From IMG/VR virus record IMGVR_UViG_3300042545_001134, positions 124,001 through 188,000 of that record: a stretch of DNA of 64,000 bases, one strand, 5' to 3'. The notes under the pieces were generated by a model. It was not told where the DNA came from. It saw nothing but the letters and a program-made list of their open reading frames with translations, and did not search any database. The position numbers and the translations under genes were made by a program. This document shows positions 1 to 30,638 of the stretch, piece by piece. How positions within the stretch are numbered: position 1 is the first letter of the stretch; the number at the start of each line of letters is the position of its first letter.

Positions 1-3000
1 TAACAAAGAGTTTAACTCCTGAAACGGGTGATGCACCCATCGCAATGTTTCCACTAGTATTAAGATGGAAATCGTTTTGATTATAACGACCCATTATAAC
101 TTTATTATCAGCGAACGCCTCAATTACGGGAACACCCGCAATTGTATTAACTGAGAATAATGAGTTACTTAAATCATCTGTGATTGTAAACAATCTACCA
201 TTAACACCATCAACCGTGAATACTTCTGTTCCACTTGCTGTACTGTTTAATTTAACAGTTGATAAGTTTGAAGTACTTGCCGGATTTAAATAATATGCGG
301 TGTCATTAATATCGTAGTAAATTGGTGCGTAAACTCTACCTGAACCATCTACTCTATATGTGAATGATGAACTGTCCGTTCTTAATGCGTAACCATAAGT
401 GGCCCCTGCGGCAATGTTTACATAAATACCATATTCTGATTTAGAACTGTTATATGCGTTGAACTGTGCCAACCAGTCATTGTTGTTTGTTGCGGTTACA
501 TATAAAGTGGCATCTTGAACTGTGTTACTATTTCCACCATCAATCCAAAGACCTCTATTATCATAAGTTCGAACCATTGTTGATTCGGTTTGGTAGATAC
601 CACCACCATGTGTTGAGTTGTACCAACCAGTATTTCCACTACTTCTAAACCAATCACTTGCGTTAAATGAAGCGGCATAAACGTAATCAGTTGATGGATT
701 TACATAAACTTCAGCGGTTCCATAAACCGCATTTCCTGAACCCCATAATAATTGATAGTTACTGTTACTATTATTGTTGTAACTAATTGCCCCAAGATAC
801 GTTCCCGCCTCTTGGTACTTACCATCGATATCAACTGTTACAGTACCGCCATCATTTCTTGTCATGGTGATAACACCAGTTGATGTATTAAATGTTGCTC
901 CGGTTACATAATAATTTGTGTCGGTATCAACAACTGTTTCACTTGCGGTGGTGATTCCGGTGATGTGACCAAAACTATCTAATAAAATGTCTTGTATGTA
1001 AGTTCTACCTGAGTTGTCTGAAGAACCAGCAGCACTTACTGAAGGGTGACCTGTTAAGAACGCAGATGCGTGTTGACCATCAAGAGTATCCGCATCCAAC
1101 CCACTTCCACTTCCATCATTACCAGAATGCCAAATTCTATATCTAACGTTACCTACTGACCATCCACCCCATACTAAGTCATTTTCTGCACCACCTAATC
1201 CGAAGTAACCCGCATAATCTCCACCAATGTGGAATGTCATATATGCATCAGCACCTGCGGTATCTTGGTAGACAGTTAATCCCCTATTAGCGGCGGCAAC
1301 TGTATTAATAAATGTATTTGATGTTTGATAAAACTCGGCAGTTCTTGTTGTTGATGCCCCACGAGAAAGTACACTATCTAATGTATCGGTTTCAGAATAA
1401 CCAGTTATGTATCCACTATTATTTGTAAACTGAGAAATATTCATACTACTCAACGCACCAGCAGTATCGGCATAACCCGCATAAATCTTATACCAAGAAC
1501 CCCACGTAGTTGCTTCTCTTGTTCTAAATGTTACATACCTATCAGAAGTATTATATCTTGGGATTGCCAACTGCATTGCGTAGTTAGCAAATGAATAATC
1601 ATTACCAAGTCCCAAAGTAAATCCGTAGAATTGTGATGAACCCGTACCCGGACCGTTTGTTGACCCATTCACATATCTCGCTCCAAAGTCTCCAACACTA
1701 TTAAAATCGGTGTAGGTACTATGATTCTGACCCATGTTATTGAACAAACGATGTTCGTCTGTCATATCATCTATTACCGAATGGGTGTGTGATGATTCCG
1801 CATATTTTCCATCAATATCAACCGTGACTGTACCACCATCATTTCTTGTCATGGTGATAACACCAGTTGAAGTATTAAATGTTGCTCCCGTTACGTAATA
1901 GTTCGTATCGGTGTTAACTGATGATATATCAACCGGACTACTAAACGCCCCTCCTGAACCGGTAAATGTTAAATTAGTGCCGTCAAAAGTAACATCACTA
2001 ATAAAATCATTCGTATCGGTTACAGTCTCACTCGCGGTAGTGATACCGGTTATATGACCAAAACCATCCAATAAAATATCTTGTATGTATGTGCGTCCAC
2101 TGTTGTTCGATGAACCTGCAGCACTTACTGAAGGGTGAGCAGTTAAGAATGAAGATGCGTGAAGACCATCTAAGGTATCGGCATCTAATCCTGAAGATGC
2201 CCCATCAGTACCCGCAGTCCACACTTTTGAATTATCCCAATATAAAACACCATCAGTTCTCATTTCTAAGAACTTACCAACATTACCACTTATATGAAAC
2301 GCAACACCAGTGGTGGTGTTACCATATGATTCAGTTGTAAGTGCTGCGGTCGAGTAGTTATTATCGGTTTGATTCTTTCTGGCATTTAAACCTCCGGTGA
2401 ACACCGATTGTGTTGAGGTTGACGCTCCCCTTGCTGTTACAGATGCCAATGTATCCGTTTCAGAATATGAAGTTAAGAATGAAGATGCGTGAAGACCATC
2501 TAAGGTATCAGCATCTAATCCTGAAGATGCCCCATCGTTTCCTGAGTGCCATACCGTTCCACCATTTACTGTTGCGGAACCACTAACCGCAAATGAACCA
2601 CTTACTGTTGTTGTTGTTCCACTAACAACAAATGCGTTTGTTCCGAATGAACCCGCAACTAATTTGTCATCAGAGAATACCTCTAATATTGGTAAACCTG
2701 AAATATCGTTAACTGAGAATAATGAACCCGATAAACTATCGGTTATTGAGAACAATTGTCCTTGTGAACCTTGAACATCAAATACTAAACTACCTGAACC
2801 ATAAACTTGTAATGGAACGTTTGGTGTTGCTGTATCTGATTCACCATAACCAACTCTAACACCTCTAGCAACTGTTAAGTAACCATTGGTTGTAAGTGCC
2901 ATTGCACCTTGTGCATCACTATGAGCAGTATCACCCCACCAAAAACCTCTATCGTCTTCACTATTGAATTGGAAAGTCATTGCGTAGTCATTAAGACCAC

Positions 3001-12703: not shown

Positions 12704-13842
12704 TATTTAATTCTTTTACCGTAGTAGATTGTATCTTTATGTACTCTTTCTCTCCATGGGTCTAAAACAATACTACCCATTGGAAATTCTGTTCCATTAA
12801 AAACATTTCTATGTCCTAATAAATAAATAGCGGGTTTGTTAATAGTGTCATATTCAACTTCCATAATAAAACTACCAATAAGTAATGAATATGAACCATC
12901 AATATATTCAACACCGGGTTTGTAACTCTTACCCATAATAACCACAGGTAAAGAATGTTCAACAGAAAGGTCAATTAATCTATTTGCCATGTTCTTTGCC
13001 TGTATTTCTCTCGACAACATAATTGAATCAAAAAGGTCATAACCTAAATCTAATTCTTTTGCCATGTATCTTAATGCAATATTGTCGCGAGGGTGACACG
13101 AACCTCCATCACCTAATCCCGCCTTCATATACGCGGGACCCGTAATGCGGTAGGTACTTCTTTCCAACGCACCCGTTACAATATCGGTATCCATATTACC
13201 ATTCTTTTCCGCAACATCCTGAATCATATTGACCAATGAAATCTTTGCGGATATGAATGTATTATAAAATATTTTAATTGCCTCAGCATCATCCCACGTA
13301 CCAATTTCATAACGAGTCCACGGTGTGATGAGTGTTTCGTAAAAATCTCTCAGTATTTTCGCATCGGTTGTTTCTGAACCATCCTCAGTCCCAATGATAA
13401 CCATTTCAGGATTTACCATATCGTTTTTTACGGTACCCATGGCAATAAGATATGGGTTGTAAATGAATCGATAATTCTTAACAAGTGGAATGAACTCTCT
13501 ACGAGTTGTTCCCGGTAGAACTGTTGAAATTAAAACAACCAATTGTTCTTTGGTTGTGTAATCGTTTATTTCATCTAAGATGTTCTTTACTGTCGTGTAA
13601 TCAAAATCCTTTGGGGTTAGATGTGATGTTGGGTGGCTACCATCATATAATGGGTCATGGGGTGTGGGTACCGCAATAAAGATTAAATCTTTACCGTTAC
13701 ACACTTCTTTTATGGTTGATACCATTTTAAAATTAGTGGGAGTCACTTCTCTAACATCGTAACCCTCAACAAAGTGTTTCTCCGCCATTACTTCCCCCAC
13801 ATCTTTTCCGAGTTTTCCAACTCCGATAAATCCTATTTTCAT
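12703..13842 (-). CDS. ugd: UDP-glucose/GDP-mannose dehydrogenase family protein
   Basis: Rossmann GFIGVGKLG, IAVPTP, ISTVLPGTT, YNPYLIAMG, AEAIKIFYNTF..KIS, GDGGSCHPRD with the catalytic Cys. Confidence 0.92.
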   Translation of the reverse strand: MKIGFIGVGKLGKDVGEVMAEKHFVEGYDVREVTPTNFKMVSTIKEVCNGKDLIFIAVPTPHDPLYDGSHPTSHLTPKDFDYTTVKNILDEINDYTTKEQLVVLISTVLPGTTRREFIPLVKNYRFIYNPYLIAMGTVKNDMVNPEMVIIGTEDGSETTDAKILRDFYETLITPWTRYEIGTWDDAEAIKIFYNTFISAKISLVNMIQDVAEKNGNMDTDIVTGALERSTYRITGPAYMKAGLGDGGSCHPRDNIALRYMAKELDLGYDLFDSIMLSREIQAKNMANRLIDLSVEHSLPVVIMGKSYKPGVEYIDGSYSLLIGSFIMEVEYDTINKPAIYLLGHRNVFNGTEFPMGSIVLDPWRERVHKDTIYYGKRIK

Positions 13843-14570
13843 AATACGTTATTTTTTAAATACGGAACAATTACTTCTTCCGAAAACTTTTTATGTCCAA
13901 ACTCAGTTGGGTGTATACCTCTATGTTCATAACCAACATGTCCATCAAATCCTAATTCGTTGTAGTTCTCTTTAACCCATTCATGACAACCACTCACGGG
14001 GAGGAACTTACTAAAATCAACCATATCAAATAGATATTTTACTTCGGGATGTGATATCAAAGTGTCTGCGCCATTTGCATGGAAAATATCCAAATATGAT
14101 GACATAAAATATTTGATACCTTTACGTTCCAAATACCATTGCACCATTAATATATTTTGCATGGTCATTAACATTGAACCAACATATGTATGTAGATTTT
14201 CGTACCAAATCTTTGCTTGGGGTATGTCCCACATATAGTTAGTTATAACCCAATTTTTTCTACCGTCAACAACATTAGTTGGGTTTTCAATCCATCCATT
14301 AATGTTTGATATTCTTTTTGAATCTTCAGTGTAAAAATCGTGTCGGTCAATACCACTCCACATGACACCAACAATAATGTCTTCAGGTTTGTGTGTCTCT
14401 AATAATTTATCTACTTGGTATATTACTTTTTTAGAAATTAATCCGTTACCCTGTGATGCCATCCCAACATTAACCAAATTGTAATCCATTTCATTACATA
14501 CAAATGTTGGCCAATTCCATGGTTCAAATGTGAAACTACATCCACTGGCAATTAGTGTTTTCTTATTCAT
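13839..14570 (-). CDS. SGNH/GDSL hydrolase-like protein
   Basis: LIASGCSFT (block I Ser), NVGMASQGNGLI (block II), C-terminal IHPTEFGH. Confidence 0.6.
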   Translation of the reverse strand: MNKKTLIASGCSFTFEPWNWPTFVCNEMDYNLVNVGMASQGNGLISKKVIYQVDKLLETHKPEDIIVGVMWSGIDRHDFYTEDSKRISNINGWIENPTNVVDGRKNWVITNYMWDIPQAKIWYENLHTYVGSMLMTMQNILMVQWYLERKGIKYFMSSYLDIFHANGADTLISHPEVKYLFDMVDFSKFLPVSGCHEWVKENYNELGFDGHVGYEHRGIHPTEFGHKKFSEEVIVPYLKNNVL

Positions 14571-15358
14571 TATATTAATTTTTTATTTATGTGTTCAAAC
14601 CAATTGTTTGATAATTGTTCCTGATACTCTAATGTGGTGTGGAATCTATATTTAATTGATGGGTCACTTCCCCGATATGTCCACGGGTTTAGTTTAGAAT
14701 CTAACATTATCATTCTATCACCAAAAAATTCAAACTCATTTGAATATAGATTTGTGTTTATACAATAGAATTCAATTCCGTTATCTAACAACTTTCTTAA
14801 CCCATTGGCAACAATCCAAGAGTCCTGTTGTGCTTTCCAATTGAAGTCGTAGAATCTATCAAACCATTCTTCTAAAATTCTAACCTCAGATTTGTTAAGT
14901 GTCTCCTTAGATTGGTTACCCCAAAAAAAGTTATTTAATGTTTCACTAATCATCTTAGGTGTTATCACTCCGAATCCCCCATGTTCCGAACTCTTATCGG
15001 GAAACCCAACATAATCTATGTTATATAGTCCATTGTTTGGTTCGTACATATTTGTTTTAAATTCCTCTTTAAATTTATCAAAATAATCTTCAGTCGTTAA
15101 GTCGTATATTGGGTATTCAAATCTATCTGGTGAGGTTAGACCAATAATCACCAAATCGGGTTTGTGTTTTATAATCTCATCGATTTGTAAACGAATAGTT
15201 TGATTACTACATCCACCTCGAGCATAGGTTACGACATTCCACCCAAGTTTTTCTCCCAGTAACTCAGTAAAATGTTTACCGTAACCATTATCTAAATCAT
15301 TTTCATTAAATGAAATTGCAGACATAAAACTATCACCACAAACACCTAAAGTTTTCAT
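14570..15358 (-). CDS. SGNH/GDSL hydrolase-like protein
   Basis: LGVCGDSFM, YARGGCSNQTI, C-terminal FHTTLEYQ. Confidence 0.55.
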   Translation of the reverse strand: MKTLGVCGDSFMSAISFNENDLDNGYGKHFTELLGEKLGWNVVTYARGGCSNQTIRLQIDEIIKHKPDLVIIGLTSPDRFEYPIYDLTTEDYFDKFKEEFKTNMYEPNNGLYNIDYVGFPDKSSEHGGFGVITPKMISETLNNFFWGNQSKETLNKSEVRILEEWFDRFYDFNWKAQQDSWIVANGLRKLLDNGIEFYCINTNLYSNEFEFFGDRMIMLDSKLNPWTYRGSDPSIKYRFHTTLEYQEQLSNNWFEHINKKLI

Positions 15359-16785
15359 ATTAATCTATTTGATATCTTTTTGTTTTCAAGTACTGTGAAA
15401 AGTTTAATAACCTCATGATTACTAATCATATTATTAAAATTATGAATTAATACTTCTTCCATTTCTTGGGTTACCTGATAACATTTATCCATATCCCACG
15501 ATGCAATTTCCTCCATTACACTGGTAATCATGTCCATTCTTTTCGTATAATTGGTCTCATTGTCATAACTTTCATCCCACCATTTGTCAAATGTTTTGAA
15601 CCCCAACTCTTTTAATTTTTTAATTGAGTATGGGTTACCAACAATAATGAATGGTTGACACGTATACATTGGTTTGTATGTCTTTTCAGAATAAAATATT
15701 GAACCTTCATCAATTAGAGATTCTGTAACCACATTTACAAAAGTGGTACTATGCGCTCCTTTACTCAAATTGGCCGCTTTGTTATTTTCTAAATCATTTT
15801 CATCGTACACGTAATGTTTTGATGAATCGTATGTGTTATAAAAATCTAATAGTCTTTTCTTTGAATGAACATAATACTCGCCTAAAGTTGCATTTAATAT
15901 GTTAAAAAATTCATGGTGGAACTTATTTTGTGAAGCACCTAAAGATTTAATTGATTTACCTATTAATTTTTCATTTGAAGATAATTCAGCAAACATAACC
16001 AGTCTATGTGGTTTAGTAACCCTATTAAAAGATAAAAAATGAAATTCTTTTTTAGTGGTTTTATTATTTTGTAAATACCAATTAAAGTTTTCTCTCATTT
16101 TTTCTTTTGTTTCATCCATTAAAATTCTACCACCGTCATGAAACCAAAGACTGTGTTGAAAATATGAGTATGGGTGTATAGTAAAATTGTCTCGGATTAA
16201 CCCGTCATTAAGTAATTTTGAATATCTATTAGTAGTCAAGAAATTAGACGTGATAACGATTACATCATCTTTATTGAAATCATATTTAGTTGATAAATTT
16301 GAAACCCATACATAATCGTTCATATTTTGTCCAAAAAATCCCTCTGTTGCCTGTATAATACACAATCTTGCTCTTTTATTTTTAATACATTCAACTAATT
16401 TATCATCTAAATCTATTGTTGGGTATTTTAAAAATAAGTCATTGTTATATAACACAATTGGGTAAACAAAACTTTTATCGGTTTCGTATATTTCATCTAA
16501 AGAAAATACTTTAAAATTACCATATGTGTTATCCAGTAAACCTTCAAAATTTTGACTATAAAATTTACACAAATACATCCTTAACTCATTAGAATCTTCG
16601 GACTTTAATCTATATGGAAATTTAATACCAAGTTCCTCCTCAATTTCATGTATTTTATCAAATTTAGCGGTGTGCCATGGGTGGATATCGTACTTCGCAA
16701 CATTTGAGTTGGGGTATAGAATTCTATTGTCTTCCGTATAAACCAAAATTTCGGAATATGCGACATTTATCTCAATATCTTTCAT
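15355..16785 (-). CDS. Putative glycosyltransferase (GT10/fucosyltransferase-like phage family)
   Basis: C-terminal FLSFNRVTKPHR, FVNVVTES, YSEKTYKP, PFIIVGNPYSIKKLKELGFKTFDKWWDESYD, resembling the GT10 ..SEK...A.....P region. Confidence 0.5.
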   Translation of the reverse strand: MKDIEINVAYSEILVYTEDNRILYPNSNVAKYDIHPWHTAKFDKIHEIEEELGIKFPYRLKSEDSNELRMYLCKFYSQNFEGLLDNTYGNFKVFSLDEIYETDKSFVYPIVLYNNDLFLKYPTIDLDDKLVECIKNKRARLCIIQATEGFFGQNMNDYVWVSNLSTKYDFNKDDVIVITSNFLTTNRYSKLLNDGLIRDNFTIHPYSYFQHSLWFHDGGRILMDETKEKMRENFNWYLQNNKTTKKEFHFLSFNRVTKPHRLVMFAELSSNEKLIGKSIKSLGASQNKFHHEFFNILNATLGEYYVHSKKRLLDFYNTYDSSKHYVYDENDLENNKAANLSKGAHSTTFVNVVTESLIDEGSIFYSEKTYKPMYTCQPFIIVGNPYSIKKLKELGFKTFDKWWDESYDNETNYTKRMDMITSVMEEIASWDMDKCYQVTQEMEEVLIHNFNNMISNHEVIKLFTVLENKKISNRLI

Positions 16786-18185
16786 TAAATCACAATTGTT
16801 TTACAAAAATTATAAAACTCCTCATATTCGGGGAATGTTTTACAGAAGTTAGTTCCTCTTCTTATATCATGTTCATTAAAGAACCTATAAAAATCTCTAC
16901 GATTTATCATTTGACGATAATCATCCTGTGGTGAAATCATCCAATCATAAATTCTCTTAATTTTTGGGATTTCCATTTGTGTAAAACCGTAACTAACCCC
17001 CTCTTTATTTAACCCAACATGAAATACTTCTTCATATGATTCCATTAAATCCCCATGACCCTTTACTAAACCACTAAAATTATGTGGTAAAACTTGTACA
17101 GTTTGATGTAACGGATACCTCAAGAATGATGAATCTAAAGAAACTGGTGTGGTCCATGCTCTTTGTGTTGATGCGTATTCCTTTTTAAGGTCGTAAACAC
17201 CACTAATCAATTTATCATAACTTAATACTGACAGTGCATTATAGGTGCTCATAATACCAATTGTCACAGTAGGACATTTAGTAAGTATTTTATTTAAGTT
17301 ATCCCAAAATTTGTTAAACACTAATCCGTGTCTACCGTATTCGGCGTGTTCACCCCAACCATCAACTGAGGTGAAAATAACAAAGTCTTTTACTCTTCGT
17401 TGGTCCTCGATTATATTGATTTTCTCAATTAGTTTATCAATTAAATTATCTGGTACACCTAAGTTACTATTAATAGCCAAGTGTAGATTTCTATTTGGTT
17501 CTTTTTGTTCGATTATATAATCTAAAACACCCCATGTATCCTTAGATAATAATGGCTCACCACCAGTGATTCTAAAAGTATCTAAGTCTCGATATAATTC
17601 GGGCCACCACTCCCAAAATGCATCAACATATGGGTTTGGTTCCGTTGCCTTAAATGGCATTCTATTTTCTTTCTTTAAATAATCTAACCCATTAAAGTTA
17701 GTAGTTGTTGGGTATGCTCCGTGACGTTCAATTTCTTGAACCCACTGTGATGAAAATGACGGACCGCAGTACGAACATTTAAAATTACATGTGTTTGAAA
17801 ATGCAACCTCAACGTAACGAGGGTTAAAATCTTCTCTCCAATCTGATTTTTTAATATCATCTAAAAGTGGTAATGACCATGGTTCGGCTGATTTAAATAT
17901 CCTATCCGAATGTTGGTCTGAATTATCTTCTACATTCCAACAATAAGCACATTCTGTTGGTCTACCGCCCTCTAACATTTCCTTTCTTTTCTCTTTTTTA
18001 AATTTAGTATTGTGTAGAGCAGAGGGGTTCCTTTTCAATTCGGATAAAGGGATAACGTGAGTATCGGGGTGGTGACATGAGTGTGTTCTACCCAATTGTA
18101 AGTGTATGGTTACTTGTGTCCATTTCGCAAGACAGAACCCGCAACCAACCTTATTTAATTCTTCTTTTATGTTATTTCGGTCCAT
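16785..18185 (-). CDS. Radical SAM protein with N-terminal auxiliary Cys cluster (twitch-like)
   Basis: CNFKCSYC (CxxxCxxC), ITGGEPLL; N-terminal CLAKW...SCHH...CAYCW. Confidence 0.88.
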   Translation of the reverse strand: MDRNNIKEELNKVGCGFCLAKWTQVTIHLQLGRTHSCHHPDTHVIPLSELKRNPSALHNTKFKKEKRKEMLEGGRPTECAYCWNVEDNSDQHSDRIFKSAEPWSLPLLDDIKKSDWREDFNPRYVEVAFSNTCNFKCSYCGPSFSSQWVQEIERHGAYPTTTNFNGLDYLKKENRMPFKATEPNPYVDAFWEWWPELYRDLDTFRITGGEPLLSKDTWGVLDYIIEQKEPNRNLHLAINSNLGVPDNLIDKLIEKINIIEDQRRVKDFVIFTSVDGWGEHAEYGRHGLVFNKFWDNLNKILTKCPTVTIGIMSTYNALSVLSYDKLISGVYDLKKEYASTQRAWTTPVSLDSSFLRYPLHQTVQVLPHNFSGLVKGHGDLMESYEEVFHVGLNKEGVSYGFTQMEIPKIKRIYDWMISPQDDYRQMINRRDFYRFFNEHDIRRGTNFCKTFPEYEEFYNFCKTIVI

Positions 18186-19602
18186 TTGTTTTTACGTTTA
18201 TTATCTTAGTGTTGTTGTAATTATAAGGATTTTCTTCAATATTTTGAATCGTTAAATTGTCCATAATTTGATTGAATCCATCATTTTTATAGTCTATTTT
18301 TCTTTGTTGCATTTCGGTAACAAATCTTTTTTCATTTCTCGCCGTGGTCTCACCCTTCACCCATCCTCCATTAACGAATCCCTCATCTTCATGTTGAAGG
18401 CATTGGAATGAACCTTCCCTTCTGTATGGGATAATATTTTCAATAATTTCAATATCCTCATCCTCAAATAAAATGTTATTTATGTCTCCATCTATTTCCT
18501 TTGTAAAGTTACAATCTAAAACTAAACTATCTACATCATCTTCCATTTTAGTGATATCATCAAAAAATCTGTTATATATCTTTATGTCCGCAATTTTACC
18601 TTTATAGTGGGTGTTTGATTGACCGCAGAATCCAATTAGAAACGGTTTAATTGATGTGTGTGACCTTAAATCTCCAGATATGGGAAATGGTATGTTTTGT
18701 TTAATACCGTCCATCTGAGAGATTAATTCATCGTTTATGTAAAAGTACATATTTTTCTCCTCACTATTGTAAGAAAGAGTCACTTGTGTCCATAGATTTT
18801 CAAATCTCTTGGCCCAATTGTAATTGAATTGATTTGACTTATCGAATAGAGTTGCGGTTACTGCTCTTGAATTATTAAATGAAATCCCCCAAGTACCACT
18901 ACCATCTTTTCTCAATAATGGGTATTCTATAAATTTTCTATTCTTATCCCCAACTAACCAAATTGGTGTCTTTTCGTCTTGTTGCTCGGCATTAAAAATG
19001 ATTGTTATTGTATGGTCATTATGTAAACAAGAATTACTTTCCCTGTTAGATAATATTTTAATCGATGAGTTTTCACCATTAAATTTGGCAACTCGTTTGT
19101 TGTTTATTTTTTTGTGTATTTTACCGGTGGTGTAATTTTCAAAATAACATCTCCAAAACAAATCATCATCCTCTTGACCCCAATCCCAATACTCGTTTGA
19201 ATATCCATTTGTTCTTTCAACATGTTCTTTGGTAAACAAAACAACCCCTCCGAAATATTGGTCATAACCTAATCCATATTGATATTTGGATAGTTTTGTT
19301 GCGATATGGATTGGGTTGTCTTTCGGATATGAATAATCGGGTAACGTATCCATATGTTTGGTATATGCTAACATATCAACATCGTGCCATGCAATATAAT
19401 CACAACCATCGTCAAATGCGAATTTGGCCGCAATGTTTTTCATCATACCCCTATTGAATAGATTATCATCCACCTGATGACCAACGTAAAATTTATGTTC
19501 AATACCTCTTTCATTTAGGTAGTTACTTAAATGTGGTACCAACCTATCGAGGTGTTCTTGTCTGTTTCTATATGGGATACAAATCCCTAATTTATGTGTC
19601 AT
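18172..19602 (-). CDS. GT7 (beta-1,4-galactosyltransferase-like) with inserted LamG-like domain
   Basis: IPYRNRQEHL, FNRGMMKN, HDVDM, YFGGV, GYSNEYWDWGQEDDDL; then about 220 aa LamG-like (KFNGENSSI...WTQVTLSY...YKGKIADIKIYNR); then PYRREGSFQCLQH. Confidence 0.85.
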   Translation of the reverse strand: MTHKLGICIPYRNRQEHLDRLVPHLSNYLNERGIEHKFYVGHQVDDNLFNRGMMKNIAAKFAFDDGCDYIAWHDVDMLAYTKHMDTLPDYSYPKDNPIHIATKLSKYQYGLGYDQYFGGVVLFTKEHVERTNGYSNEYWDWGQEDDDLFWRCYFENYTTGKIHKKINNKRVAKFNGENSSIKILSNRESNSCLHNDHTITIIFNAEQQDEKTPIWLVGDKNRKFIEYPLLRKDGSGTWGISFNNSRAVTATLFDKSNQFNYNWAKRFENLWTQVTLSYNSEEKNMYFYINDELISQMDGIKQNIPFPISGDLRSHTSIKPFLIGFCGQSNTHYKGKIADIKIYNRFFDDITKMEDDVDSLVLDCNFTKEIDGDINNILFEDEDIEIIENIIPYRREGSFQCLQHEDEGFVNGGWVKGETTARNEKRFVTEMQQRKIDYKNDGFNQIMDNLTIQNIEENPYNYNNTKIINVKTNGPK

Positions 19603-21011
19603 ATTCCTACTACAATATTTGTTTGATTCTCAACATTCGCAACACTATGTTGAATGTACTTACAAGTGGATAAACCATCTTCCTTTATGTTTCGATAACC
19701 TTTCATTACTTCATTGTAAAATCTTAATTGGTTAAACCTCGTCATGTCACTTCTCCAACCATCTTTAACAAAACCATTTTCTTCGTGGGTTAATAATTTG
19801 AATGTTGATTGTCTTCTAAATGGTACATCAATTGTTTTGAATTCATCATAGGTGTTACCAACAATCTCACAATTAATGATTTCCCCATCGTTTCCATTAC
19901 CAGATAAATCCATAAGTTTATAACCTTTAATGAATTTTGAATCATAATAAAGTTTCAATGCATAATCAGATGTATATCTTCCAAAACTTTGAGTTAAACC
20001 AAAATAATGATTGTCAGATATTTCCCTTATCTCAGCATATGATAATTCTTTATCGAAGACCGCAAATGAACTAATTAATCCTCTATAATAATTGTTTTCT
20101 CGGGTTCTATTTGGATTACCAACACCTAAATAAAAATGTGGTTCCTTTGTGTACTCGTATAATTTGGTGAACTTGTCTTGTGAAACCAAATCCCCATCCT
20201 GATAAAATTTAATTATCTTATCTGTTGGGTTAATGGTTACCGCAATATTGGTTCTATAATTTGTTTTTATATTTGAATATTGATATATGATATTTCTACC
20301 TCCATCAAAAATTTCCACTGTGTATCTTGAGTATGAGTTATATGTAATTGTGAAATCATAACCGGGTATGGTAAATAATGAATACTTATCACTTTTCTCC
20401 TCGAAGTCACAAACTAGTTCATCGGGGTAGAATGAAATGAATATTGTCATCTCCTCTCTTTGTTTGAAGAAGTTGTTACCCTTAACATATGCATCAACAC
20501 CATTAAATTTTAAAGATGCAACATTCCCACCCTTCATTTCAATTTTCTTTGTGTCGAGTGGAACTCCATTTACTTTACATCTAAAAAGTAAATCATCATC
20601 TTCGTAACCCCATCCCCAATAATCATTTGAATACCCATTTATATGTTCGAATGAATCAATAGGAAACATTGTTACCCCACCGAAGTAACCATCAAAGATT
20701 ACCCTATTTGTTTCACCAATAAAGTTTGTTGCCATTTGAATTGGTATGTCAGAATACGAATAATCAACATCAACTGGTAACATGTCTACATCGTGGAAAA
20801 CAACATAATCACATTTAATTTTCTTGGCATACAAAAATCCCACATTCAATAATTTACCTCTATTGAATGCAGAAGAATCGTCCTGTTCAACTACAATTAA
20901 CTCAAAATCAATTCCTTTATTTTTTAAGTAAGGTATAATTGATTGTTTAAACATTTGTAGATGTTCATAACGGTCTCTATATGGGACTATGACACCAAGT
21001 TTCTTATCCAT
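19599..21011 (-). CDS. GT7 (beta-1,4-galactosyltransferase-like) with inserted LamG-like domain, paralog
   Basis: VPYRDRYEHL, FNRGKLLNVG, FHDVDMLP, YFGGV, GYSNDYWGWGYEDDDL; LamG-like insert (KFNGVDAY...YRGLISSFAVFDKELS); then PFRRQSTFKLLTH. Confidence 0.87.
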   Translation of the reverse strand: MDKKLGVIVPYRDRYEHLQMFKQSIIPYLKNKGIDFELIVVEQDDSSAFNRGKLLNVGFLYAKKIKCDYVVFHDVDMLPVDVDYSYSDIPIQMATNFIGETNRVIFDGYFGGVTMFPIDSFEHINGYSNDYWGWGYEDDDLLFRCKVNGVPLDTKKIEMKGGNVASLKFNGVDAYVKGNNFFKQREEMTIFISFYPDELVCDFEEKSDKYSLFTIPGYDFTITYNSYSRYTVEIFDGGRNIIYQYSNIKTNYRTNIAVTINPTDKIIKFYQDGDLVSQDKFTKLYEYTKEPHFYLGVGNPNRTRENNYYRGLISSFAVFDKELSYAEIREISDNHYFGLTQSFGRYTSDYALKLYYDSKFIKGYKLMDLSGNGNDGEIINCEIVGNTYDEFKTIDVPFRRQSTFKLLTHEENGFVKDGWRSDMTRFNQLRFYNEVMKGYRNIKEDGLSTCKYIQHSVANVENQTNIVVGI

Positions 21012-21222
21012 TTATGGTTGGGTCTTTCGGTTTTGTGGTATCGTGCCACTCAGAAAGATAAAATTGAATTCTATCACTCCATTCTTTTTTATCAACCTCT
21101 TCAAACCAAACGGTTAGTGCATCTAAAGAGTTGGCAATTTTTTCCATTGCCTTAACTTTTCTTTGCTCAAGAAGTAGGAACTCATTTTGTTCTTCTGTCG
21201 TGTTTCCTTTTTTTACGGTCAT
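21004..21222 (-). CDS. Hypothetical protein (72 aa)
   Basis: ORF track; overlaps both neighbours in operon fashion. Confidence 0.6.
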   Translation of the reverse strand: MTVKKGNTTEEQNEFLLLEQRKVKAMEKIANSLDALTVWFEEVDKKEWSDRIQFYLSEWHDTTKPKDPTING

Positions 21223-22076
21223 ATTGATATGATTTTTTTAATTAATTTATTCCATTGTTTATACTGTTTGAATTCGGGTTTTGATGTATTTTTTTCAAAC
21301 ATGTATTCAGGTTCATTTAAATCTATTTTAAATTTTGATTTTCTCAATGATTCGTACATTTTTTTATACTCGGATGAATATGCGTATGGTTGATTGATTA
21401 ACGCAACATTTTTAACCCTCCCAATTGAATCTTTATCCCATTTAAAATGGTGAACCTGTATTGAATATGTATCAATTGGTGCAATCAGTGGGTGACTCCA
21501 ACCTTGCCATCTCCATGTGGTGTGACCATCTATTTTTGCATAGTGTTGACCATTTGTGATTTCAACATATCCTTTAACAACACAAATCTTATTGGGGCAG
21601 GCATCACTCATTGGATGTCTAAAGAAACCAGCATTTGGGTATTGTTTCCAAATAGATTCATTTGGTTGTAATTCTGAAAACTCCCCATCGGGTCCAATTC
21701 TATCAATAAATCCACCGCGTACAATATCCCAATTGTTTTTTTCACAATCAGATATTAATTGTTTTAAATTGTCTTTGGGGTATAGATGGAATTCATCGAT
21801 ATCGGCGATTACCCACCAATCATCAGGATAATCCTTTTTAATGTAGTTGTATGATTGAGTTACTTTTTCCCAATCAAAAACTCTTTCGTTGATTGTCTTA
21901 ACAATCTTTACATTGGTAAACTCGATAAGAATCTGACTAATTTCATCACCCAATTCTCGGTGTAAATCAGATTCGTATACAACGATGTTAATTTCGTCAA
22001 CATATTTTTCATAATGTTTTATAAAGTGGGGTAGTAACTTAGTTCCATGTCCAATTACAGTTAATAACCTTATCAT
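21219..22076 (-). CDS. GT-A fold glycosyltransferase (GT2/GT92-like)
   Basis: LLPHFIKHY, WWVIADIDEFH (DxDE motif), KICVVKG, HHFKW. Confidence 0.7.
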   Translation of the reverse strand: MIRLLTVIGHGTKLLPHFIKHYEKYVDEINIVVYESDLHRELGDEISQILIEFTNVKIVKTINERVFDWEKVTQSYNYIKKDYPDDWWVIADIDEFHLYPKDNLKQLISDCEKNNWDIVRGGFIDRIGPDGEFSELQPNESIWKQYPNAGFFRHPMSDACPNKICVVKGYVEITNGQHYAKIDGHTTWRWQGWSHPLIAPIDTYSIQVHHFKWDKDSIGRVKNVALINQPYAYSSEYKKMYESLRKSKFKIDLNEPEYMFEKNTSKPEFKQYKQWNKLIKKIISI

Positions 22077-22801
22077 TTTTTTCTATTTATAATCGTTATC
22101 CCCGTCGAAGACGGTTTTGAAGGAATAATACGAAAATTAAATAGATTAATCAAGTTCCACTCGGGATTTTCTTGTAGTTCTTTAATAAATTTGGACGGAC
22201 CGTCAAACTTATGGTAATCTTTTTTTGCATCTTCAGACACAATTAGATTCTTTTCATAGTTTTCATCGGTATCGTGAATAACAATCACCCCGTTTTCAGA
22301 TAATAAGGTGGAGTAAAGGTCAAAATCTAATTTTACACCCTCATAGGTGTGGTCTCCATCAATAAATAGGAAATCAATCTTAATATCTTGGAGAGTAAAA
22401 AAGTTATAAAAGGCGTTTTCTGAGGTATTTTTAATAAATCGTGGGTAAAACGTTTTTCTATAGAAAGAATCTTCATTTTCAAGGTCAGTTTCTCCACCAA
22501 CACCGTTACATGCGTCCACAACATAAGTTGCACCAATGTCACCCCAATTATAATCGGGATTCCCCTCAAAAATACCTTGTTTGTGAAGGTCAATACGTGA
22601 CTGTGTGATGATACGTGGAATGAATCCACCACCTGAACCGATACACACACAATTCTTTGCTCTCATGTGTTGTATTAGACTATAAACAACAATCCCATCA
22701 CCCATATGGAAATCGGTTGCACCGTGTGTCCAACGATAGGGAACGGGATTATCCTCGTTATTAGTAATAAAGTTCTTTATGTAGTCACTATTGGTAATCA
22801 C
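22073..22801 (-). CDS. Class I SAM-dependent methyltransferase (Methyltransf_24-like)
   Basis: VCIGSGGG, VVDA, IDFLFIDGDHTYEGVKLDFDLYSTLLSENGVIVIHD. Confidence 0.85.
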   Translation of the reverse strand: MITNSDYIKNFITNNEDNPVPYRWTHGATDFHMGDGIVVYSLIQHMRAKNCVCIGSGGGFIPRIITQSRIDLHKQGIFEGNPDYNWGDIGATYVVDACNGVGGETDLENEDSFYRKTFYPRFIKNTSENAFYNFFTLQDIKIDFLFIDGDHTYEGVKLDFDLYSTLLSENGVIVIHDTDENYEKNLIVSEDAKKDYHKFDGPSKFIKELQENPEWNLINLFNFRIIPSKPSSTGITIINRKK

Positions 22802-23213: not shown

Positions 23214-25166
23214 TTAAAAGACAACCCACAAACTCCAGTTATCTGCTCCACCGATAATTGATGGTTCTGTCCAACCGGCGTATCCACATACACCCGTTTT
23301 AAGTGGGTTACCACCATTGACACCTATACCGAACGCAGAACCTGCGGCACCATATGACAACGCACCTGTATTTCCGGTACTCTCATCCAATATACTACCA
23401 ACTCGTATTCTTCCTCCTGAACTACCTCCACCACCACCATAGTGTCCCTCATGTTTTAAATCCATACCCATTAGGTATATTTCAGTACCAAGAGCACTGG
23501 TGTATCGTCTATCTGCACCAACTAAACTTCTATAGTCAATACTGTTACCGAAATGTGGTGAACTTCTATTTGCTGAACTATTCCAACTTCTTGTTTGTGC
23601 TGCGTACATACTACTCACTTCACTTGCCAATGAGAATGTTGATTGGTAATTAAGTTCACCCATGGTCCAATAGAATTCCGTAAATGGAACGACGTTGTAA
23701 CTTTGATATTTACTACTAACTCCGTTTGTTAGGGTAAAATCATTTTGGTTATCTAATGTTGTGTTTTCCCAATATGAACTATCGGGTACATAACCACTTT
23801 CATTTCCACCTTTCATTACGCAAACCATTGCCTTATTTAAATAAAATTTAACAGGTGCTTGAAACGCCGATTGTCCACTTGGTTGTAACCAATAGTTACC
23901 ATCTTTTGAAATACCTAAATTTTTTAAATAAGTGGCACTTGGAGCCGCTAACGCTTGGGTGCTACCATCCTTAACTGATGGTAATGAAAATCTACCTTTA
24001 TATTGTTGATAGTTATTTAAAATTTCATTTTCGGTTAATGCCCTGTTATAAACTTTTGTAACGTCTACTTGACCATTTAATTTATAAGTACCGTAACCAC
24101 TATGATTACTTTGTCCAATCCAAGTTCCGTATATTGGATATGCTCCCATTTTTGTGTCAACATAAACACCGGCAGATTGTCCATTAATATATAATCTCAC
24201 TCTACCATCTGTTGCACTTATTGTTTCGTAAATCCCAACAACATGATTATAATTGGTTTTTGGTTGGCACGCAACTGTTGCGTTTCCACTAACCGTGTAT
24301 TGATATCCTACAGTGTCGGGTGGCCCACTTCTTGTTGATAAACTAACAATATCGGATGAATATGAGTACCACAAATTAAAACGATAATTTTCAAATAACG
24401 GTCCGTCATTACCTGATGCTCCACTAGCAATTTTAAAAACTTGTTCAACGGTTACCGCAGAAACGCTCGATGGGAAATAATCACTAACATTACCTAAATC
24501 AATTCTATCATCTGTTCCATCTAAAACGGGTTTACCATTTGCATCAAAAGAAGATGCCGATAAATCAATAGTTGTTAAACCCACAATATCTAATAACCCT
24601 TGTGTTACACTTCTTGAACCGTCAACAAATGGTGTGGCAAACGAACCAGCCTCAATTTGTGGCATTGTTACTTCCCATGACGAAAAATCATCACAATAAG
24701 TTCCACCGAATGATATTAAATAAAAGGTACCGTTAGTTCCCGTGCAATTTTGTGTGTTGGACACTCTAATCCACTCACCGGGAGACGATTTACTATGGTA
24801 CGCTGCGGTGTCACCGATTCCAAAACCACTTGTATAGACTGTACCACCATTATTATTTGCCGAACCTCCAATATACCTAATATATGCGGAAAATGTGTAT
24901 GTTCCGGTTGATGGTAATGATATACCACCCATAACGACACCATTCCAAGAGCCAAGATTTGACATTCGATATCCTGTTGTTCCAAACTCTGTTGTAAACG
25001 TAACAGGTGTACCACAAGAATAGTTACCAAAATTCGCCATAGTTGACGCATTGGTAACATAATTTGTTGTTGGTTTACCCTTAAATGAATTTTTAGTTTC
25101 ACCAACATCATACCCAAAGGTTAATCCTGATGTTGAAATTTTTCCATATCCCGAATTTACTGACAT
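23214..25166 (-). CDS. LamG/ConA-like lectin protein with CBM-like insert and C-terminal fibrinogen/intelectin-like domain
   Basis: GLTFGYD..NSFKGKPTTN; insert ending PQIEAGSFATPF; LDGTDDRI..LNGQVDVTKVYNRALTENEILNNY; then SATYL..DGNYWLQPSG. Confidence 0.8.
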   Translation of the reverse strand: MSVNSGYGKISTSGLTFGYDVGETKNSFKGKPTTNYVTNASTMANFGNYSCGTPVTFTTEFGTTGYRMSNLGSWNGVVMGGISLPSTGTYTFSAYIRYIGGSANNNGGTVYTSGFGIGDTAAYHSKSSPGEWIRVSNTQNCTGTNGTFYLISFGGTYCDDFSSWEVTMPQIEAGSFATPFVDGSRSVTQGLLDIVGLTTIDLSASSFDANGKPVLDGTDDRIDLGNVSDYFPSSVSAVTVEQVFKIASGASGNDGPLFENYRFNLWYSYSSDIVSLSTRSGPPDTVGYQYTVSGNATVACQPKTNYNHVVGIYETISATDGRVRLYINGQSAGVYVDTKMGAYPIYGTWIGQSNHSGYGTYKLNGQVDVTKVYNRALTENEILNNYQQYKGRFSLPSVKDGSTQALAAPSATYLKNLGISKDGNYWLQPSGQSAFQAPVKFYLNKAMVCVMKGGNESGYVPDSSYWENTTLDNQNDFTLTNGVSSKYQSYNVVPFTEFYWTMGELNYQSTFSLASEVSSMYAAQTRSWNSSANRSSPHFGNSIDYRSLVGADRRYTSALGTEIYLMGMDLKHEGHYGGGGGSSGGRIRVGSILDESTGNTGALSYGAAGSAFGIGVNGGNPLKTGVCGYAGWTEPSIIGGADNWSLWVVF

Positions 25167-25169
25167 ATC

Positions 25170-27088: not shown

Positions 27089-27100
27089 ATCTTAAATACT

Positions 27101-30632: not shown

Positions 30633-30638
30633 AATATT

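What the first reader, a model, noticed from the sequence alone, without database searches (positions are those of the whole stretch)
18172..21011. Two tandem GT7 galactosyltransferases whose catalytic domain is split by a LamG lectin domain
In beta4GalT family enzymes the WGxEDDD motif is followed within about 25 aa by R-P..G...H. In both genes here about 220-240 aa with LamG signatures (xFNG.xxY, W..V..Y, Y.G.I....Y/F...L) are inserted between EDDDL and P(Y/F)RR...H. This places a lectin module beside the acceptor site. It is the same fold that is amplified in the adjacent virion-gene array, which hints at substrate targeting or docking onto virion lectin proteins.
Basis: partly seen in the sequence, partly recalled or inferred. 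Interest (0 to 1): 0.7.

Follow-up and report, generated by a model that had tools for sequence, protein, structure and literature searches.

The report
Phage glycosyltransferases split by a LamG domain
Two neighbouring genes of a 310-kb freshwater phage encode sugar-transferring enzymes of the animal beta-1,4-galactosyltransferase type whose catalytic domain is interrupted by a lectin-like LamG module, and related phages attach the same module to radical-SAM enzymes, so it looks like a shared targeting device in a conserved phage glycan-modification cassette.

Summary
Window 18172-19602(-) and 19599-21011(-) are intact ORFs of 476 and 470 aa that overlap by ATGA. Both score above threshold for Glyco_transf_7N and 7C. 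Both carry about 225-240 aa of LamG fold between the EDDD helix and the P-(Y/F)-R-R...H segment.

AlphaFold models are confident (pLDDT 93-95, pTM 0.89-0.90). Each superposes on Drosophila beta4GalT7 in one rigid fit over 206-216 of 241 residues, spanning both ends of the chain. So the C-terminal piece completes the GT-A core. The insert matches LamG/pentraxin domains at Z about 20. DxD, E-D and the metal-binding His are conserved.

New findings:
- The pair sits in a five-gene cassette (methyltransferase, GT2-like, GT7-B, GT7-A, twitch radical SAM) conserved in about 75-80 of 80 related viral contigs.
- The insert is a circularly permuted LamG_3.
- In related phages the same permuted module stands free beside radical-SAM genes (30 of 30 cases) or is fused to the rSAM orthologue (13 ORFs).
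- The architecture appears virus-specific and is not described in the literature I could search.

Donor sugar, acceptor and lectin activity remain untested. I rate it a new variant of a known kind, of moderate to high interest.

The parts
19599..21011 (-). GT7L_B gene (P0002, 470 aa): beta4GalT-like GT-A enzyme with an internal LamG module
   Evidence: ORF. Pfam 7N, 7C and Laminin_G_3 all above cut-off. AF2 model pLDDT 95.4, pTM 0.90. 3lw6_A matches at Z 25.8.
20535..21011 (-). GT7L_B N-terminal catalytic part (res 1-159): Rossmann-like core with DVD (D74, D76), W134 and E137-D138-D139-D140
   Evidence: phmmer against beta4GalT7 and beta4GalT1 gives E 1e-28 over res 4-153. The uninserted-family HMM positions 2-158 map here. 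Invariant or near-invariant residues are listed.
19827..20534 (-). GT7L_B inserted LamG module (res about 160-395), a circularly permuted LamG_3
   Evidence: VIA-align matches on model 160-391: 8hgg_C Z 21.6, 4dqa_A Z 21.5, pentraxins Z 17-20. Pfam Laminin_G_3 covers 219-328. The last strands (res 348-382) align with the first strands of canonical phage LamG proteins: hhalign probability 91.6%, E 8e-7.
19599..19826 (-). GT7L_B C-terminal catalytic part (res 396-470) plus stop: P397, R399-R400, H409 (metal ligand), lid loop 410-421, N427..R430-F431 helix, D445-G446-L447
   Evidence: Uninserted-family HMM 153-208 maps to res 399-463. The single superposition on 3lw6 spans residues 1..470 with 206 aligned. 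With the C-terminal profile, the top 12 PDB hits are all the beta4GalT1 C-terminus (E 0.26-1). pLDDT dips to 84 at 411-420.
18172..19602 (-). GT7L_A gene (P0001, 476 aa): paralogue with the same architecture, 30% identical to GT7L_B end to end
   Evidence: ORF. BLASTP E 9e-54 over the full length. AF2 pLDDT 93.2, pTM 0.89. 3lw6_A matches at Z 27.0 with 216 of 241 aligned, model 1..476.
18436..19107 (-). GT7L_A inserted LamG module (res about 166-389)
   Evidence: VIA-align matches on 166-389: 8hgg_C Z 20.0, 4dqa_A Z 18.0, pentraxins and neurexin LNS Z 15-17. Pfam Laminin_G_3 at 26.2 bits is just under the cut-off. The insert HMM scores E 1.7e-43. Polar and aromatic residues are conserved among orthologues.
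16785..18185 (-). Twitch-domain radical SAM enzyme, last gene of the conserved cassette
   Evidence: NCBIfam NF033640 N_Twi_rSAM at 341.8 bits (cut-off 170). Adjacent in 77 of 80 related loci. Orthologues in related phages carry 1-2 N-terminal copies of the same permuted LamG module.
21219..22076 (-). GT2-like glycosyltransferase (Glyco_tranf_2_4, sub-threshold), cassette gene 2
   Evidence: Pfam E 1.5e-5, 25.9 bits against a cut-off of 27.5. Present in 79 of 80 related loci in the same order.
22073..22801 (-). Class I SAM-dependent methyltransferase (Methyltransf_24), cassette gene 1
   Evidence: Pfam E 4e-13. Present in 75 of 80 related loci.
21004..21222 (-). Small 72-aa ORF between the GT2-like gene and GT7L_B; it overlaps both neighbours and matches no family
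   Evidence: Called as a gene on the other contigs that carry the identical GT7L_B protein. No Pfam hit. Sequence shown.

Best explanation
The two genes encode soluble, cytoplasmic, metal-dependent inverting glycosyltransferases built on the beta4GalT (GT7) GT-A scaffold. Neither has a signal peptide, membrane anchor or stem.

Each carries a circularly permuted LamG_3 beta-sandwich of about 230 aa. It is inserted in the loop just before the metal-binding His, at the hinge of the lid loop that in beta4GalT1 closes over the donor and forms the acceptor site. The catalytic core is re-formed around the insert and should be active.

I propose that the LamG module is the acceptor-recognition, or targeting, part of the enzyme. 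It would hold a glycan or glycosylated acceptor next to the active site, functionally like the lectin domains of polypeptide GalNAc-transferases or GnT-IVa.

The two paralogues act as consecutive steps of a five-gene phage cassette: SAM methyltransferase, GT2-like transferase, GT7L_B, GT7L_A and twitch radical SAM. The cassette would build and tailor an oligosaccharide during infection.

My preferred acceptor is a phage structural or host-recognition protein encoded in the same hypervariable region. Host envelope glycan precursors are the main alternative.

Shown here: the architecture, the fold, conservation of the catalytic residues, conservation of the cassette, and sharing of the module with rSAM enzymes. 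Inferred: activity, donor, the lectin role and the acceptor.
For: Architecture and fold:
- Pfam 7N + 7C + LamG_3.
- The uninserted-family HMM splits into two parts on both proteins.
- BLASTP of an uninserted relative jumps from residue 158 to residue 392.
- AF2 models have pLDDT 95.4 and 93.2 and pTM 0.90 and 0.89. This implies a confidently fixed arrangement of the two domains.
- 3lw6_A (beta4GalT7) matches at Z 25.8 and 27.0 with 206 and 216 of 241 residues aligned across the whole chain. LamG/pentraxin matches at Z about 20 fall on the insert.

Catalytic competence:
- D74, D138 and P397 are invariant. D76, W134, E137, D140, H409 and N427 are at least 90% conserved in 69 homologues at about 29% mean identity. 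The pattern is the same with the A paralogue as reference.
- The N-Q-x-R-F helix aligns with the beta4GalT1 N-P-Q-R-F lid segment.

The insert is under selection:
- It is 43-46% identical among orthologues, against 49-52% for the C-terminal core.
- The A clade keeps conserved polar and aromatic residues such as H197, Q207, Q208, K211, E226, R231, N243, N244, R246, Y261, W263, K265 and W271.

Cassette:
- MT24, GT2_4, GT7L_B, GT7L_A and rSAM occur in the same order, in 75 to 80 of 80 IMG/VR loci depending on the gene.
- 74 of 80 loci have exactly two tandem GT7L genes and 5 have three.
- Genes overlap at their ends.

The LamG module is a shared enzyme accessory:
- In 30 of 79 related loci a free-standing protein of 213-261 aa is colinear with the whole insert. 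In 30 of 30 cases it lies within 60 nt of an rSAM gene. Canonical small LamG proteins do so in only 3 of 23 cases.
- All 13 rSAM ORFs of 600 aa or more carry 1-2 such modules fused N-terminally to an orthologue (50-60% identity) of the window's rSAM.

Other support:
- A metagenomic protein fuses a B-like and an A-like uninserted domain in the same order.
- Tailoring genes lie next door: a NodU-like carbamoyltransferase, a nucleotide-sugar dehydrogenase-like gene and a GDSL-like gene.
- The literature describes a similar context of glycosyltransferases, rSAM cassettes and ConA-domain structural proteins in the host-recognition hypervariable region of aquatic T4-like phages (PMC7029224).
- Precedents for lectin domains steering GT-A enzymes are PMC4432651 and PMC9296478.
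Against: - No activity, donor, acceptor or ligand has been measured.
- I had no model coordinates, so the distance and orientation of the LamG surface relative to the active site are not known.
- Across all 69 homologues the only near-invariant insert residues are glycines, so no universal binding site is evident.
- The window's own rSAM lacks a LamG module, and this genome has no free-standing permuted LamG protein.
- Nothing here shows that the adjacent LamG array proteins are virion components or are glycosylated.
- Published opinion on similar phage regions favours modification of the host O-chain.
- Evidence for transcription is weak: only short contigs in one metatranscriptome, which may contain DNA.
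Confidence: 0.6

Rival explanations
1. The enzymes are as described, but the acceptor is a host cell-envelope glycan precursor (LPS O-chain, capsule or a lipid-linked oligosaccharide). The LamG module would recognise that polysaccharide. The cassette would remodel the host surface, for example to block superinfection or the re-adsorption of progeny.
For: This is the published reading of glycosyltransferase clusters in the hypervariable region of aquatic T4-like phages (PMC7029224). The neighbouring genes (NodU-like carbamoyltransferase, nucleotide-sugar dehydrogenase-like, GDSL-like) are typical of polysaccharide tailoring. The uninserted relatives of the catalytic domain are common in bacterial genomes.
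Against: The proteins have no membrane anchor or amphipathic terminus, because the GT domain starts at residue 3. No flippase, polymerase or Gtr-type genes were seen among the annotated neighbours. The architecture is found only on viral contigs, and it sits beside putative receptor-binding proteins.
Confidence: 0.25
2. The LamG module is not a lectin for the substrate. It is a protein-protein docking or scaffolding module that assembles the cassette enzymes (GT7L_A, GT7L_B and the rSAM enzymes) into one complex, or that fixes the lid-loop geometry. It would have no ligand of its own.
For: The same module is attached to two unrelated enzyme classes, which a common docking role would also explain. 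Pentraxin-like and LamG domains often mediate protein contacts. No universally conserved polar site is seen in the insert. pTM of 0.9 indicates a rigid interface with the GT core.
Against: The A clade keeps a cluster of conserved polar and aromatic residues typical of ligand sites. The window's own rSAM has no LamG module to dock with. The cassette methyltransferase and GT2-like enzyme showed no LamG domain in the Pfam scan.
Confidence: 0.15
3. The cassette glycosylates phage DNA, that is hypermodified bases, as protection against restriction.
For: Phage GT-A enzymes that glycosylate 5hmC DNA exist (bioRxiv 10.1101/2023.12.21.572611). The genome encodes a thymidylate-synthase-family protein. 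Radical SAM enzymes occur in some base-hypermodification pathways (my own knowledge).
Against: The thymidylate-synthase-like gene lies about 40 kb away, whereas DNA hypermodification genes usually cluster. The described DNA-acting GT-A enzymes are JGT/TarP-like, and neither GT7 nor a lectin is mentioned in that paper. A LamG beta-sandwich is not a known DNA-binding module. The neighbours are sugar-tailoring enzymes and LamG or fibrinogen-like proteins.
Confidence: 0.04
4. The proteins are catalytically dead pseudo-enzymes that survive as carbohydrate-binding or structural proteins.
For: A large insertion next to the lid loop might be expected to disturb catalysis. There are no activity data.
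Against: DxD, W-G-x-E-D-D-D, the His ligand and the C-terminal D-G-L segment are conserved across 69 homologues at 25-30% identity and in both paralogues. The N-terminal core is the most conserved part among orthologues at 63-66% identity.
Confidence: 0.04

Closest known systems
Animal beta-1,4-galactosyltransferases, CAZy GT7 (beta4GalT7: PDB 3lw6, 4lw6, 4irq; beta4GalT1: 1o0r, 2ae7)
   Same: They share the GT-A fold (Z 25.8-27, rmsd 2.0-2.2 A, 31-35% identity). They also share the DVD metal motif, the W-G-x-E-D-D-D motif with the catalytic Asp, a His metal ligand after an R-P-type strand, a lid segment with N..R-F, and a terminal D-G-L..Y strand.
   Different: The phage proteins have no membrane anchor or stem and are phage-encoded and cytoplasmic. 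About 230 aa of LamG domain is inserted 12 residues before the His ligand. Donor and acceptor are unknown, so 'galactosyltransferase' is only a family name here.
Uninserted GT7-like proteins of about 216 aa in bacteria and viruses (for example in Pelagibacteraceae, Chlamydiae, alphaproteobacteria, and Mimivirus/AaV 'galactosyltransferases')
   Same: The same catalytic domain, 40-50% identical over residues 3-156, and the same C-terminal R-x-G-x-(F/Y)-x-x-L-x-H ... D-G-L segment.
   Different: They have no insert. A constrained tree in which all 64 inserted proteins form one clade is not rejected and scores better than the free tree (p-AU 0.83). This is consistent with a single insertion event before the A/B duplication.
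Polypeptide GalNAc-transferases (GT27) and GnT-IVa/MGAT4A: GT-A enzymes with a lectin domain
   Same: A GT-A catalytic domain joined to a carbohydrate-binding module that selects or positions the acceptor (PMC4432651, PMC9296478). This is the functional analogy I propose.
   Different: In those enzymes the lectin is appended at the C-terminus, and in GalNAc-Ts it is a beta-trefoil fold. It is not a LamG domain inserted inside the catalytic domain. GalNAc-Ts are retaining enzymes (my own knowledge).
Free-standing and rSAM-fused permuted LamG modules of related phages
   Same: They are colinear with the whole insert (E 1e-11 to 1e-25), with the same permuted strand order. They are encoded in the same cassette.
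   Different: They are not inserted in a glycosyltransferase. They lie next to, or are fused N-terminally to, twitch radical SAM enzymes. This type is absent from the window's own genome.
Canonical LamG_3 proteins of the adjacent array (window 23214-38570)
   Same: The same Pfam family, with detectable sequence similarity (E 3e-16 to 6e-5).
   Different: The canonical strand order has the L-x-L-x-x-D...D-L-S-G-N-G-N strands first. In the insert these strands come last (hhalign probability 91.6%, E 8e-7).
Virus-encoded cytoplasmic glycosylation of structural proteins (chlorovirus capsid glycans; mycobacteriophage virion glycosylation, Freeman et al. 2023)
   Same: These viruses encode their own glycosyltransferases, and sugar methyltransferases, to decorate virion proteins (my own knowledge; cited in PMC12619734).
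   Different: The enzyme families differ, and no LamG-inserted GT7 is known there. Virion glycosylation is not shown for this phage.

Membership tests
beta4GalT family (Pfam Glyco_transf_7N/7C; CAZy GT7) | Sequence match to both family profiles above the curated cut-offs | tested here: met
   7N scores 57.3 and 77.7 bits (cut-off 27). 7C scores 68.5 and 59.1 bits (cut-off 23). phmmer against beta4GalT7 gives E 3e-28.
beta4GalT family (Pfam Glyco_transf_7N/7C; CAZy GT7) | GT-A fold that superposes on a solved family member, including the C-terminal part | tested here: met
   3lw6_A matches at Z 25.8 and 27.0, with 206 and 216 of 241 residues aligned at rmsd 2.2 and 2.0 A. The model ranges are 1..470 and 1..476. 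These are predicted models, not experimental structures.
beta4GalT family (Pfam Glyco_transf_7N/7C; CAZy GT7) | DxD metal motif, W-G-x-E-D-D-D with the catalytic Asp, and a downstream His metal ligand | tested here: met
   D74-V-D76, W134, E137-D138-D139-D140 and H409 in P0002. D74-V-D76, W141, E144-D145-D146-D147 and H404 in P0001. All are invariant or at least 90% conserved.
beta4GalT family (Pfam Glyco_transf_7N/7C; CAZy GT7) | Contiguous catalytic domain (EDDD helix to His within about 27 residues) | tested here: not met
   About 225-240 aa is inserted between them. This is the variant feature. It does not remove the other defining features.
beta4GalT family (Pfam Glyco_transf_7N/7C; CAZy GT7) | Inverting transfer of Gal or GalNAc from a UDP-sugar in beta-1,4 linkage | not testable with these tools
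   No assay was possible. The Tyr at the position of bovine Y289 (Y109 and Y116, from the alignment) hints at a hexose rather than a HexNAc donor. That is inference only.
beta4GalT family (Pfam Glyco_transf_7N/7C; CAZy GT7) | Type II membrane topology with a stem (animal members) | tested here: not met
   The catalytic domain starts at residue 3-4. The uninserted microbial relatives share this.
LamG / ConA-like lectin superfamily (Pfam Laminin_G_3) | Profile match above the cut-off | tested here: inconclusive
   P0002 scores 36.5 bits, above the 27.6 cut-off. P0001 scores 26.2 bits, below it. The insert HMM links both inserts at E 1.7e-43.
LamG / ConA-like lectin superfamily (Pfam Laminin_G_3) | Beta-sandwich fold matching solved LamG/pentraxin domains | tested here: met
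   8hgg_C matches at Z 21.6 and 20.0, 4dqa_A at Z 21.5 and 18.0, and pentraxins, neurexin LNS and laminin LG at Z 14-20. All fall on residues about 160-391 and 166-389.
LamG / ConA-like lectin superfamily (Pfam Laminin_G_3) | Canonical strand order | tested here: not met
   The insert's last strands align with the first strands of canonical phage LamG_3 proteins (hhalign 91.6%, E 8e-7). HMM hits are split in permuted order. This has not been verified on structures.
LamG / ConA-like lectin superfamily (Pfam Laminin_G_3) | Binding of a carbohydrate or other ligand (lectin function) | not testable with these tools
   No binding data exist. Only clade-specific conserved polar and aromatic residues point that way.

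The most novel reading that the evidence does not exclude
Aquatic jumbo phages use a dedicated, circularly permuted LamG 'adaptor' module to aim chemically unrelated modification enzymes at one common target. It is inserted at the lid hinge of two GT7 glycosyltransferases and is fused to, or partnered with, twitch radical-SAM enzymes. The target would most likely be a glycan on their own host-recognition or virion proteins. The cassette would then be a programmable system for glycan decoration of virions, in which acceptor binding by the inserted LamG is mechanically coupled to closure of the catalytic lid.
Probability: 0.25. Interest if true: 0.8.

Novelty: new variant of a known kind. Interest (0 to 1): 0.62.

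Why it matters
GT7 enzymes are textbook animal Golgi enzymes. Here thousands of phage homologues carry a lectin-fold domain inserted into the catalytic domain itself, right at the hinge of the loop that creates the acceptor site. Lectin modules that I know of in GT-A enzymes are appended at the C-terminus, not inserted.

The same permuted module travels with radical-SAM enzymes. That offers a natural case of modular enzyme targeting, and a handle on the unexplained glycosyltransferase and radical-SAM cassettes in the host-recognition regions of abundant aquatic phages.

If the target is the virion, this would extend phage virion glycosylation beyond mycobacteriophages to a widespread group of freshwater and marine jumbo phages. 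The compact, soluble enzymes could also be useful for glyco-engineering.

Tried and rejected
- Megablast of the locus against 50,697 GenBank phage records found no match. tblastn of P0002 against the same set also found none.
- PHROGs and NCBIfam returned no family for either protein.
- phmmer of the bare C-terminal 86-92 aa against PDB sequences found nothing. A 62-sequence profile then gave only sub-significant hits (E 0.26-1). All of them were to the correct part of beta4GalT1.
- MAFFT of inserted plus uninserted sequences misplaced the short C-termini. I replaced it with the HMM split test.
- The first tree used a flawed labelling in which truncated fragments counted as uninserted, so I discarded it. 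The relabelled tree is poorly resolved at depth, so I relied on the constrained-clade test.
- A five-sequence HMM of canonical LamG proteins gave only weak permuted hits. The profile-profile comparison superseded it.
- Complex prediction of GT7L_B with GT7L_A returned 'no answer', so I make no claim about a heterodimer.
- Literature searches for Glyco_transf_7C plus phage, and for LamG plus galactosyltransferase plus phage, found nothing.
- Membership of this genome in the 'moraphage' lineage (PMC12619734) could not be checked. The paper lists no identifiers comparable to ours.
- I considered assembly chimera or gene-fusion artefact and rejected it. The identical protein is on 19-21 contigs from many samples, and the architecture is conserved down to 25% identity.

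Full report
**1. What is there**

The window is positions 124001-188000 of a 310,691-bp IMG/VR virus record, estimated 93% complete. The record encodes a T4-type major capsid protein. It matches Pfam Gp23 at E 6.5e-64. It is only 32% identical to its best GenBank relative, an uncultured 484-kb phage. The locus is found in many lake-water and freshwater metagenomes.

The finding's coordinates coincide with two intact minus-strand ORFs. I call 19599-21011 (470 aa, P0002) GT7L_B and 18172-19602 (476 aa, P0001) GT7L_A. The stop of B overlaps the start of A by ATGA. The upstream 72-aa ORF and the downstream radical-SAM gene also overlap their neighbours. This is a tightly packed operon.

**2. The split catalytic domain is real**

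Both proteins exceed the Pfam cut-offs for Glyco_transf_7N and 7C. Both have a Laminin_G_3 match between the two halves: 36.5 bits in B and 26.2 bits in A, against a cut-off of 27.6. Residues 4-153 align with solved beta4GalT7 and beta4GalT1 at E 1e-28 to 1e-23. The alignment stops right after the EDDD helix.

The exhaustive representative search found many uninserted relatives of about 216 aa. A profile of 17 of them hits each phage protein twice and colinearly. Profile positions 2-158 map to residues 2-159. Positions 153-208 map to residues 399-463 in B, and positions 146-210 map to 387-461 in A. An uninserted relative aligns by plain BLASTP to A residues 3-158 and then 392-446. The net insertion is about 240 aa in B and about 225 aa in A.

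**3. Structure**

I built AlphaFold2 models from alignments of 69 and 63 homologues. They are very confident: pLDDT 95.4 and 93.2, pTM 0.90 and 0.89. An exhaustive structural comparison puts Drosophila beta4GalT7 (3lw6_A) first. It scores Z 25.8 and 27.0, with 206 and 216 of its 241 residues superposed at 2.0-2.2 A, over model ranges 1..470 and 1..476. The N-terminal part has only about 155 residues. So at least 50-60 residues of the C-terminal segment must occupy their canonical place in the same rigid fit. The GT-A core is therefore reconstituted around the insert.

The next matches all fall on residues about 160-391 (B) and 166-389 (A). They are the PAPP-A LG domain (Z 21.6 and 20.0), BACOVA_03559 (Z 21.5 and 18.0), pentraxins, neurexin LNS, laminin LG and CBM40. 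The insert is a LamG/ConA-like sandwich.

**4. Catalytic machinery**

I aligned 69 inserted homologues with a mean column identity of 29%. D74, D138, P397 and G446 are invariant. D76, W134, E137, D140, H409 and N427 are at least 90% conserved. The pattern is equivalent with A as the reference. These residues correspond to the DVD metal motif, the W-G-x-E-D-D-D motif with its catalytic Asp, and the His metal ligand of beta4GalT1 and beta4GalT7. That assignment rests on established knowledge of the family and on the alignments.

A profile of the C-terminal segment finds only beta4GalT1 chains in the PDB. The hits are sub-significant (E 0.26-1) but fall at the correct colinear place. They align the phage N427-Q-L-R430-F431 with the N-P-Q-R-F lid segment. 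The lowest model confidence in that region is at residues 411-420, as expected for a mobile lid. The insertion therefore sits 12 residues upstream of the His ligand, at the N-terminal hinge of the lid. I could not obtain coordinates, so the spatial relation of the LamG surface to the cleft remains an inference.

**5. The insert is a permuted LamG_3 under selection**

A profile of the insert detects the adjacent array of LamG proteins in this genome at E 3e-16 to 6e-5. The hits cover only profile positions about 4-180. Small extra hits to positions about 170-225 lie N-terminal in those array proteins.

Canonical phage LamG_3 proteins begin with the L-x-L-x-x-D ... D-L-S-G-N-G-N-x-G strands. An F-D-G segment follows, and they end with L-S-x-x-E-I-x-x-N-Y. 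The insert begins with F-N-G and runs to L-S-Y-A-E-I. After a short linker it ends with L-K-L-Y-Y-D ... D-L-S-G-N-G-N-D-G. A profile-profile comparison aligns the insert's last strands (B residues 348-382) with residues 10-49 of a canonical 232-aa protein, at probability 91.6% and E 8e-7. This is the signature of a circular permutation. It still needs structural confirmation.

Among orthologues from 79 related loci the insert is 43-46% identical. The C-terminal core is 49-52% identical and the N-terminal core 63-66%. The insert is therefore constrained. The A clade keeps many polar and aromatic insert residues.

**6. Conserved cassette**

At least 474 IMG/VR stretches encode relatives. The contigs reach 335 kb. 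In the 80 best loci the gene order is Methyltransf_24, GT2-like, GT7L_B, GT7L_A, radical SAM. These genes are present in 75, 79, 80, 80 and 77 loci respectively. Seventy-four loci have exactly two tandem GT7L genes, five have three and one has one.

The radical-SAM protein belongs to NCBIfam N_Twi_rSAM, scoring 341.8 bits against a cut-off of 170. In this genome the cassette is flanked on one side by a NodU-like carbamoyltransferase, a nucleotide-sugar dehydrogenase-like gene, DUF6071 and a GDSL-like gene. On the other side lies an array of LamG_3 proteins plus a fibrinogen-C-like protein.

**7. The same module serves radical-SAM enzymes**

In 30 of the 79 related loci there is a free-standing protein of 213-261 aa that is colinear with the entire insert, in the same permuted order (E down to 1.7e-25). 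In all 30 cases it lies within 60 nt of a radical-SAM gene. Canonical small LamG proteins do so in only 3 of 23 cases.

All 13 radical-SAM ORFs of 600 aa or more consist of one or two N-terminal copies of this module followed by an orthologue (50-60% identity) of the window's radical-SAM protein. One module type is thus inserted into GT7 enzymes and is fused to, or partnered with, radical-SAM enzymes of the same cassette. This is my strongest, though indirect, evidence that the module is a functional accessory such as a targeting or docking device, and not an inert insertion. One metagenomic protein fuses an uninserted B-like and an uninserted A-like domain in the genomic order. That fits A and B working together.

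**8. Distribution and origin**

Among 185,579 species genomes, full-length inserted hits occur only on a handful of MAG contigs, some of them 23-248 kb. I interpret these as mis-binned phage contigs, though I did not check this. All other hits cover only residues about 3-156, that is uninserted bacterial relatives. ESM Atlas clusters with the 7N/7C/LamG_3 architecture are labelled 100% viral.

AlphaFold DB clusters hold one full-length match, A0A2E0BNI5 (474 aa, TM 0.72), which carries an automatic name only. The viral structure library has none. No GenBank phage record matches. A tree of the N-terminal core is poorly resolved. However, forcing all 64 inserted proteins into one clade gives a better likelihood than the free search, and it is not rejected (p-AU 0.83). 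This is consistent with one insertion event before the A/B duplication.

**9. Mechanism and rivals**

Most likely these are active, Mn-dependent inverting transferases that perform two consecutive steps. The LamG module would present a glycan or glycosylated acceptor to the cleft. The polypeptide GalNAc-transferase and GnT-IVa lectin domains are functional analogues (PMC4432651, PMC9296478).

For the acceptor I prefer phage structural or host-recognition proteins, at about 0.4. Host envelope glycans are the main alternative and are favoured in the literature for similar regions (PMC7029224). A pure docking or scaffold role, DNA glycosylation and pseudo-enzymes are less likely. A heterodimer prediction gave no answer. 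Short metatranscriptome contigs map to both genes, but this does not prove transcription.

**10. Novelty**

The phage group may be related to the recently named 'moraphages' (PMC12619734). That paper notes four glycosyltransferase orthogroups but describes no such architecture. My literature searches found no description of a LamG-inserted GT7 enzyme. The sequences exist in databases as hypothetical proteins. I rate this a new variant of a known enzyme kind. It has an unusual internal lectin-fold insertion and an unexpected link to radical-SAM enzymes.

Noticed in passing
L029:10815-13637, L019:6602-8722 and 11 other long ORFs in related IMG/VR loci: Orthologues of the window's twitch radical-SAM protein carry one or two N-terminal copies of the same permuted LamG module that is inserted in the GT7 enzymes. 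In 30 further loci the module is a separate gene directly next to an rSAM gene.
   Followed up: yes
protein P0130 (450 aa, metagenomic representative): This is a single polypeptide made of an uninserted GT7L_B-like domain followed by an uninserted GT7L_A-like domain, in the same order as the tandem genes. It could be a natural fusion or secondary loss of the inserts. Only one sequence was seen.
   Followed up: partly
G000:C1:13589-15988 (outside the window; L003:415-2814, minus strand): A 799-aa multi-domain protein contains a third GT7-like domain that is uninserted, with the motif W-G-W-G-S-E-D-N-D. Long additional N- and C-terminal regions flank it and were not scanned for domains. The genome thus has three GT7-type domains.
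   Followed up: partly
window 23214-38570 (-): An array of about 13 paralogous genes, most ending in a canonical Laminin_G_3 domain. It includes small proteins of 232-255 aa that begin M-A/G-L-H/E-F/Y. A fibrinogen-C-like protein lies at 30639-31337. I obtained no evidence on whether these are virion proteins.
   Followed up: partly
window 11033-15358 (-): A run of sugar-tailoring-type genes next to the cassette: a NodU-like carbamoyltransferase (11033-12703), a nucleotide-sugar dehydrogenase-like gene below the family cut-offs (12703-13842), DUF6071 (13839-14570) and a GDSL/SGNH-like gene (14570-15358).
   Followed up: no
window 15355-16785 (-): A 476-aa protein with only a weak DUF5757 hit. 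It recurs near the cassette in about 20 of 80 related loci. Its function is unknown.
   Followed up: no
G000:C1:276548-278026 (outside the window; L005): The T4-type major capsid protein (576 aa) matches the Gp23 profile in two pieces, positions 3-107 and 110-356, separated by about 125 aa. This suggests an insertion domain in the capsid protein.
   Followed up: no
window 2-7969 (-): A very long ORF of more than 2,656 aa that runs off the window end. It has no credible Pfam match. It may be a fibre or another large structural protein.
   Followed up: no
G000:C1:102906-103946 (outside the window; L170): A thymidylate-synthase-family domain sits in a 430-aa ORF, longer than a plain ThyA. I did not resolve whether it is a thymidylate synthase or a hydroxymethylase.
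   Followed up: no
L076:6210-7664, L077, L078, L084, L085: Five related loci carry a third, more divergent GT7-LamG paralogue (about 25% identity) between the GT2-like gene and GT7L_B.
   Followed up: partly
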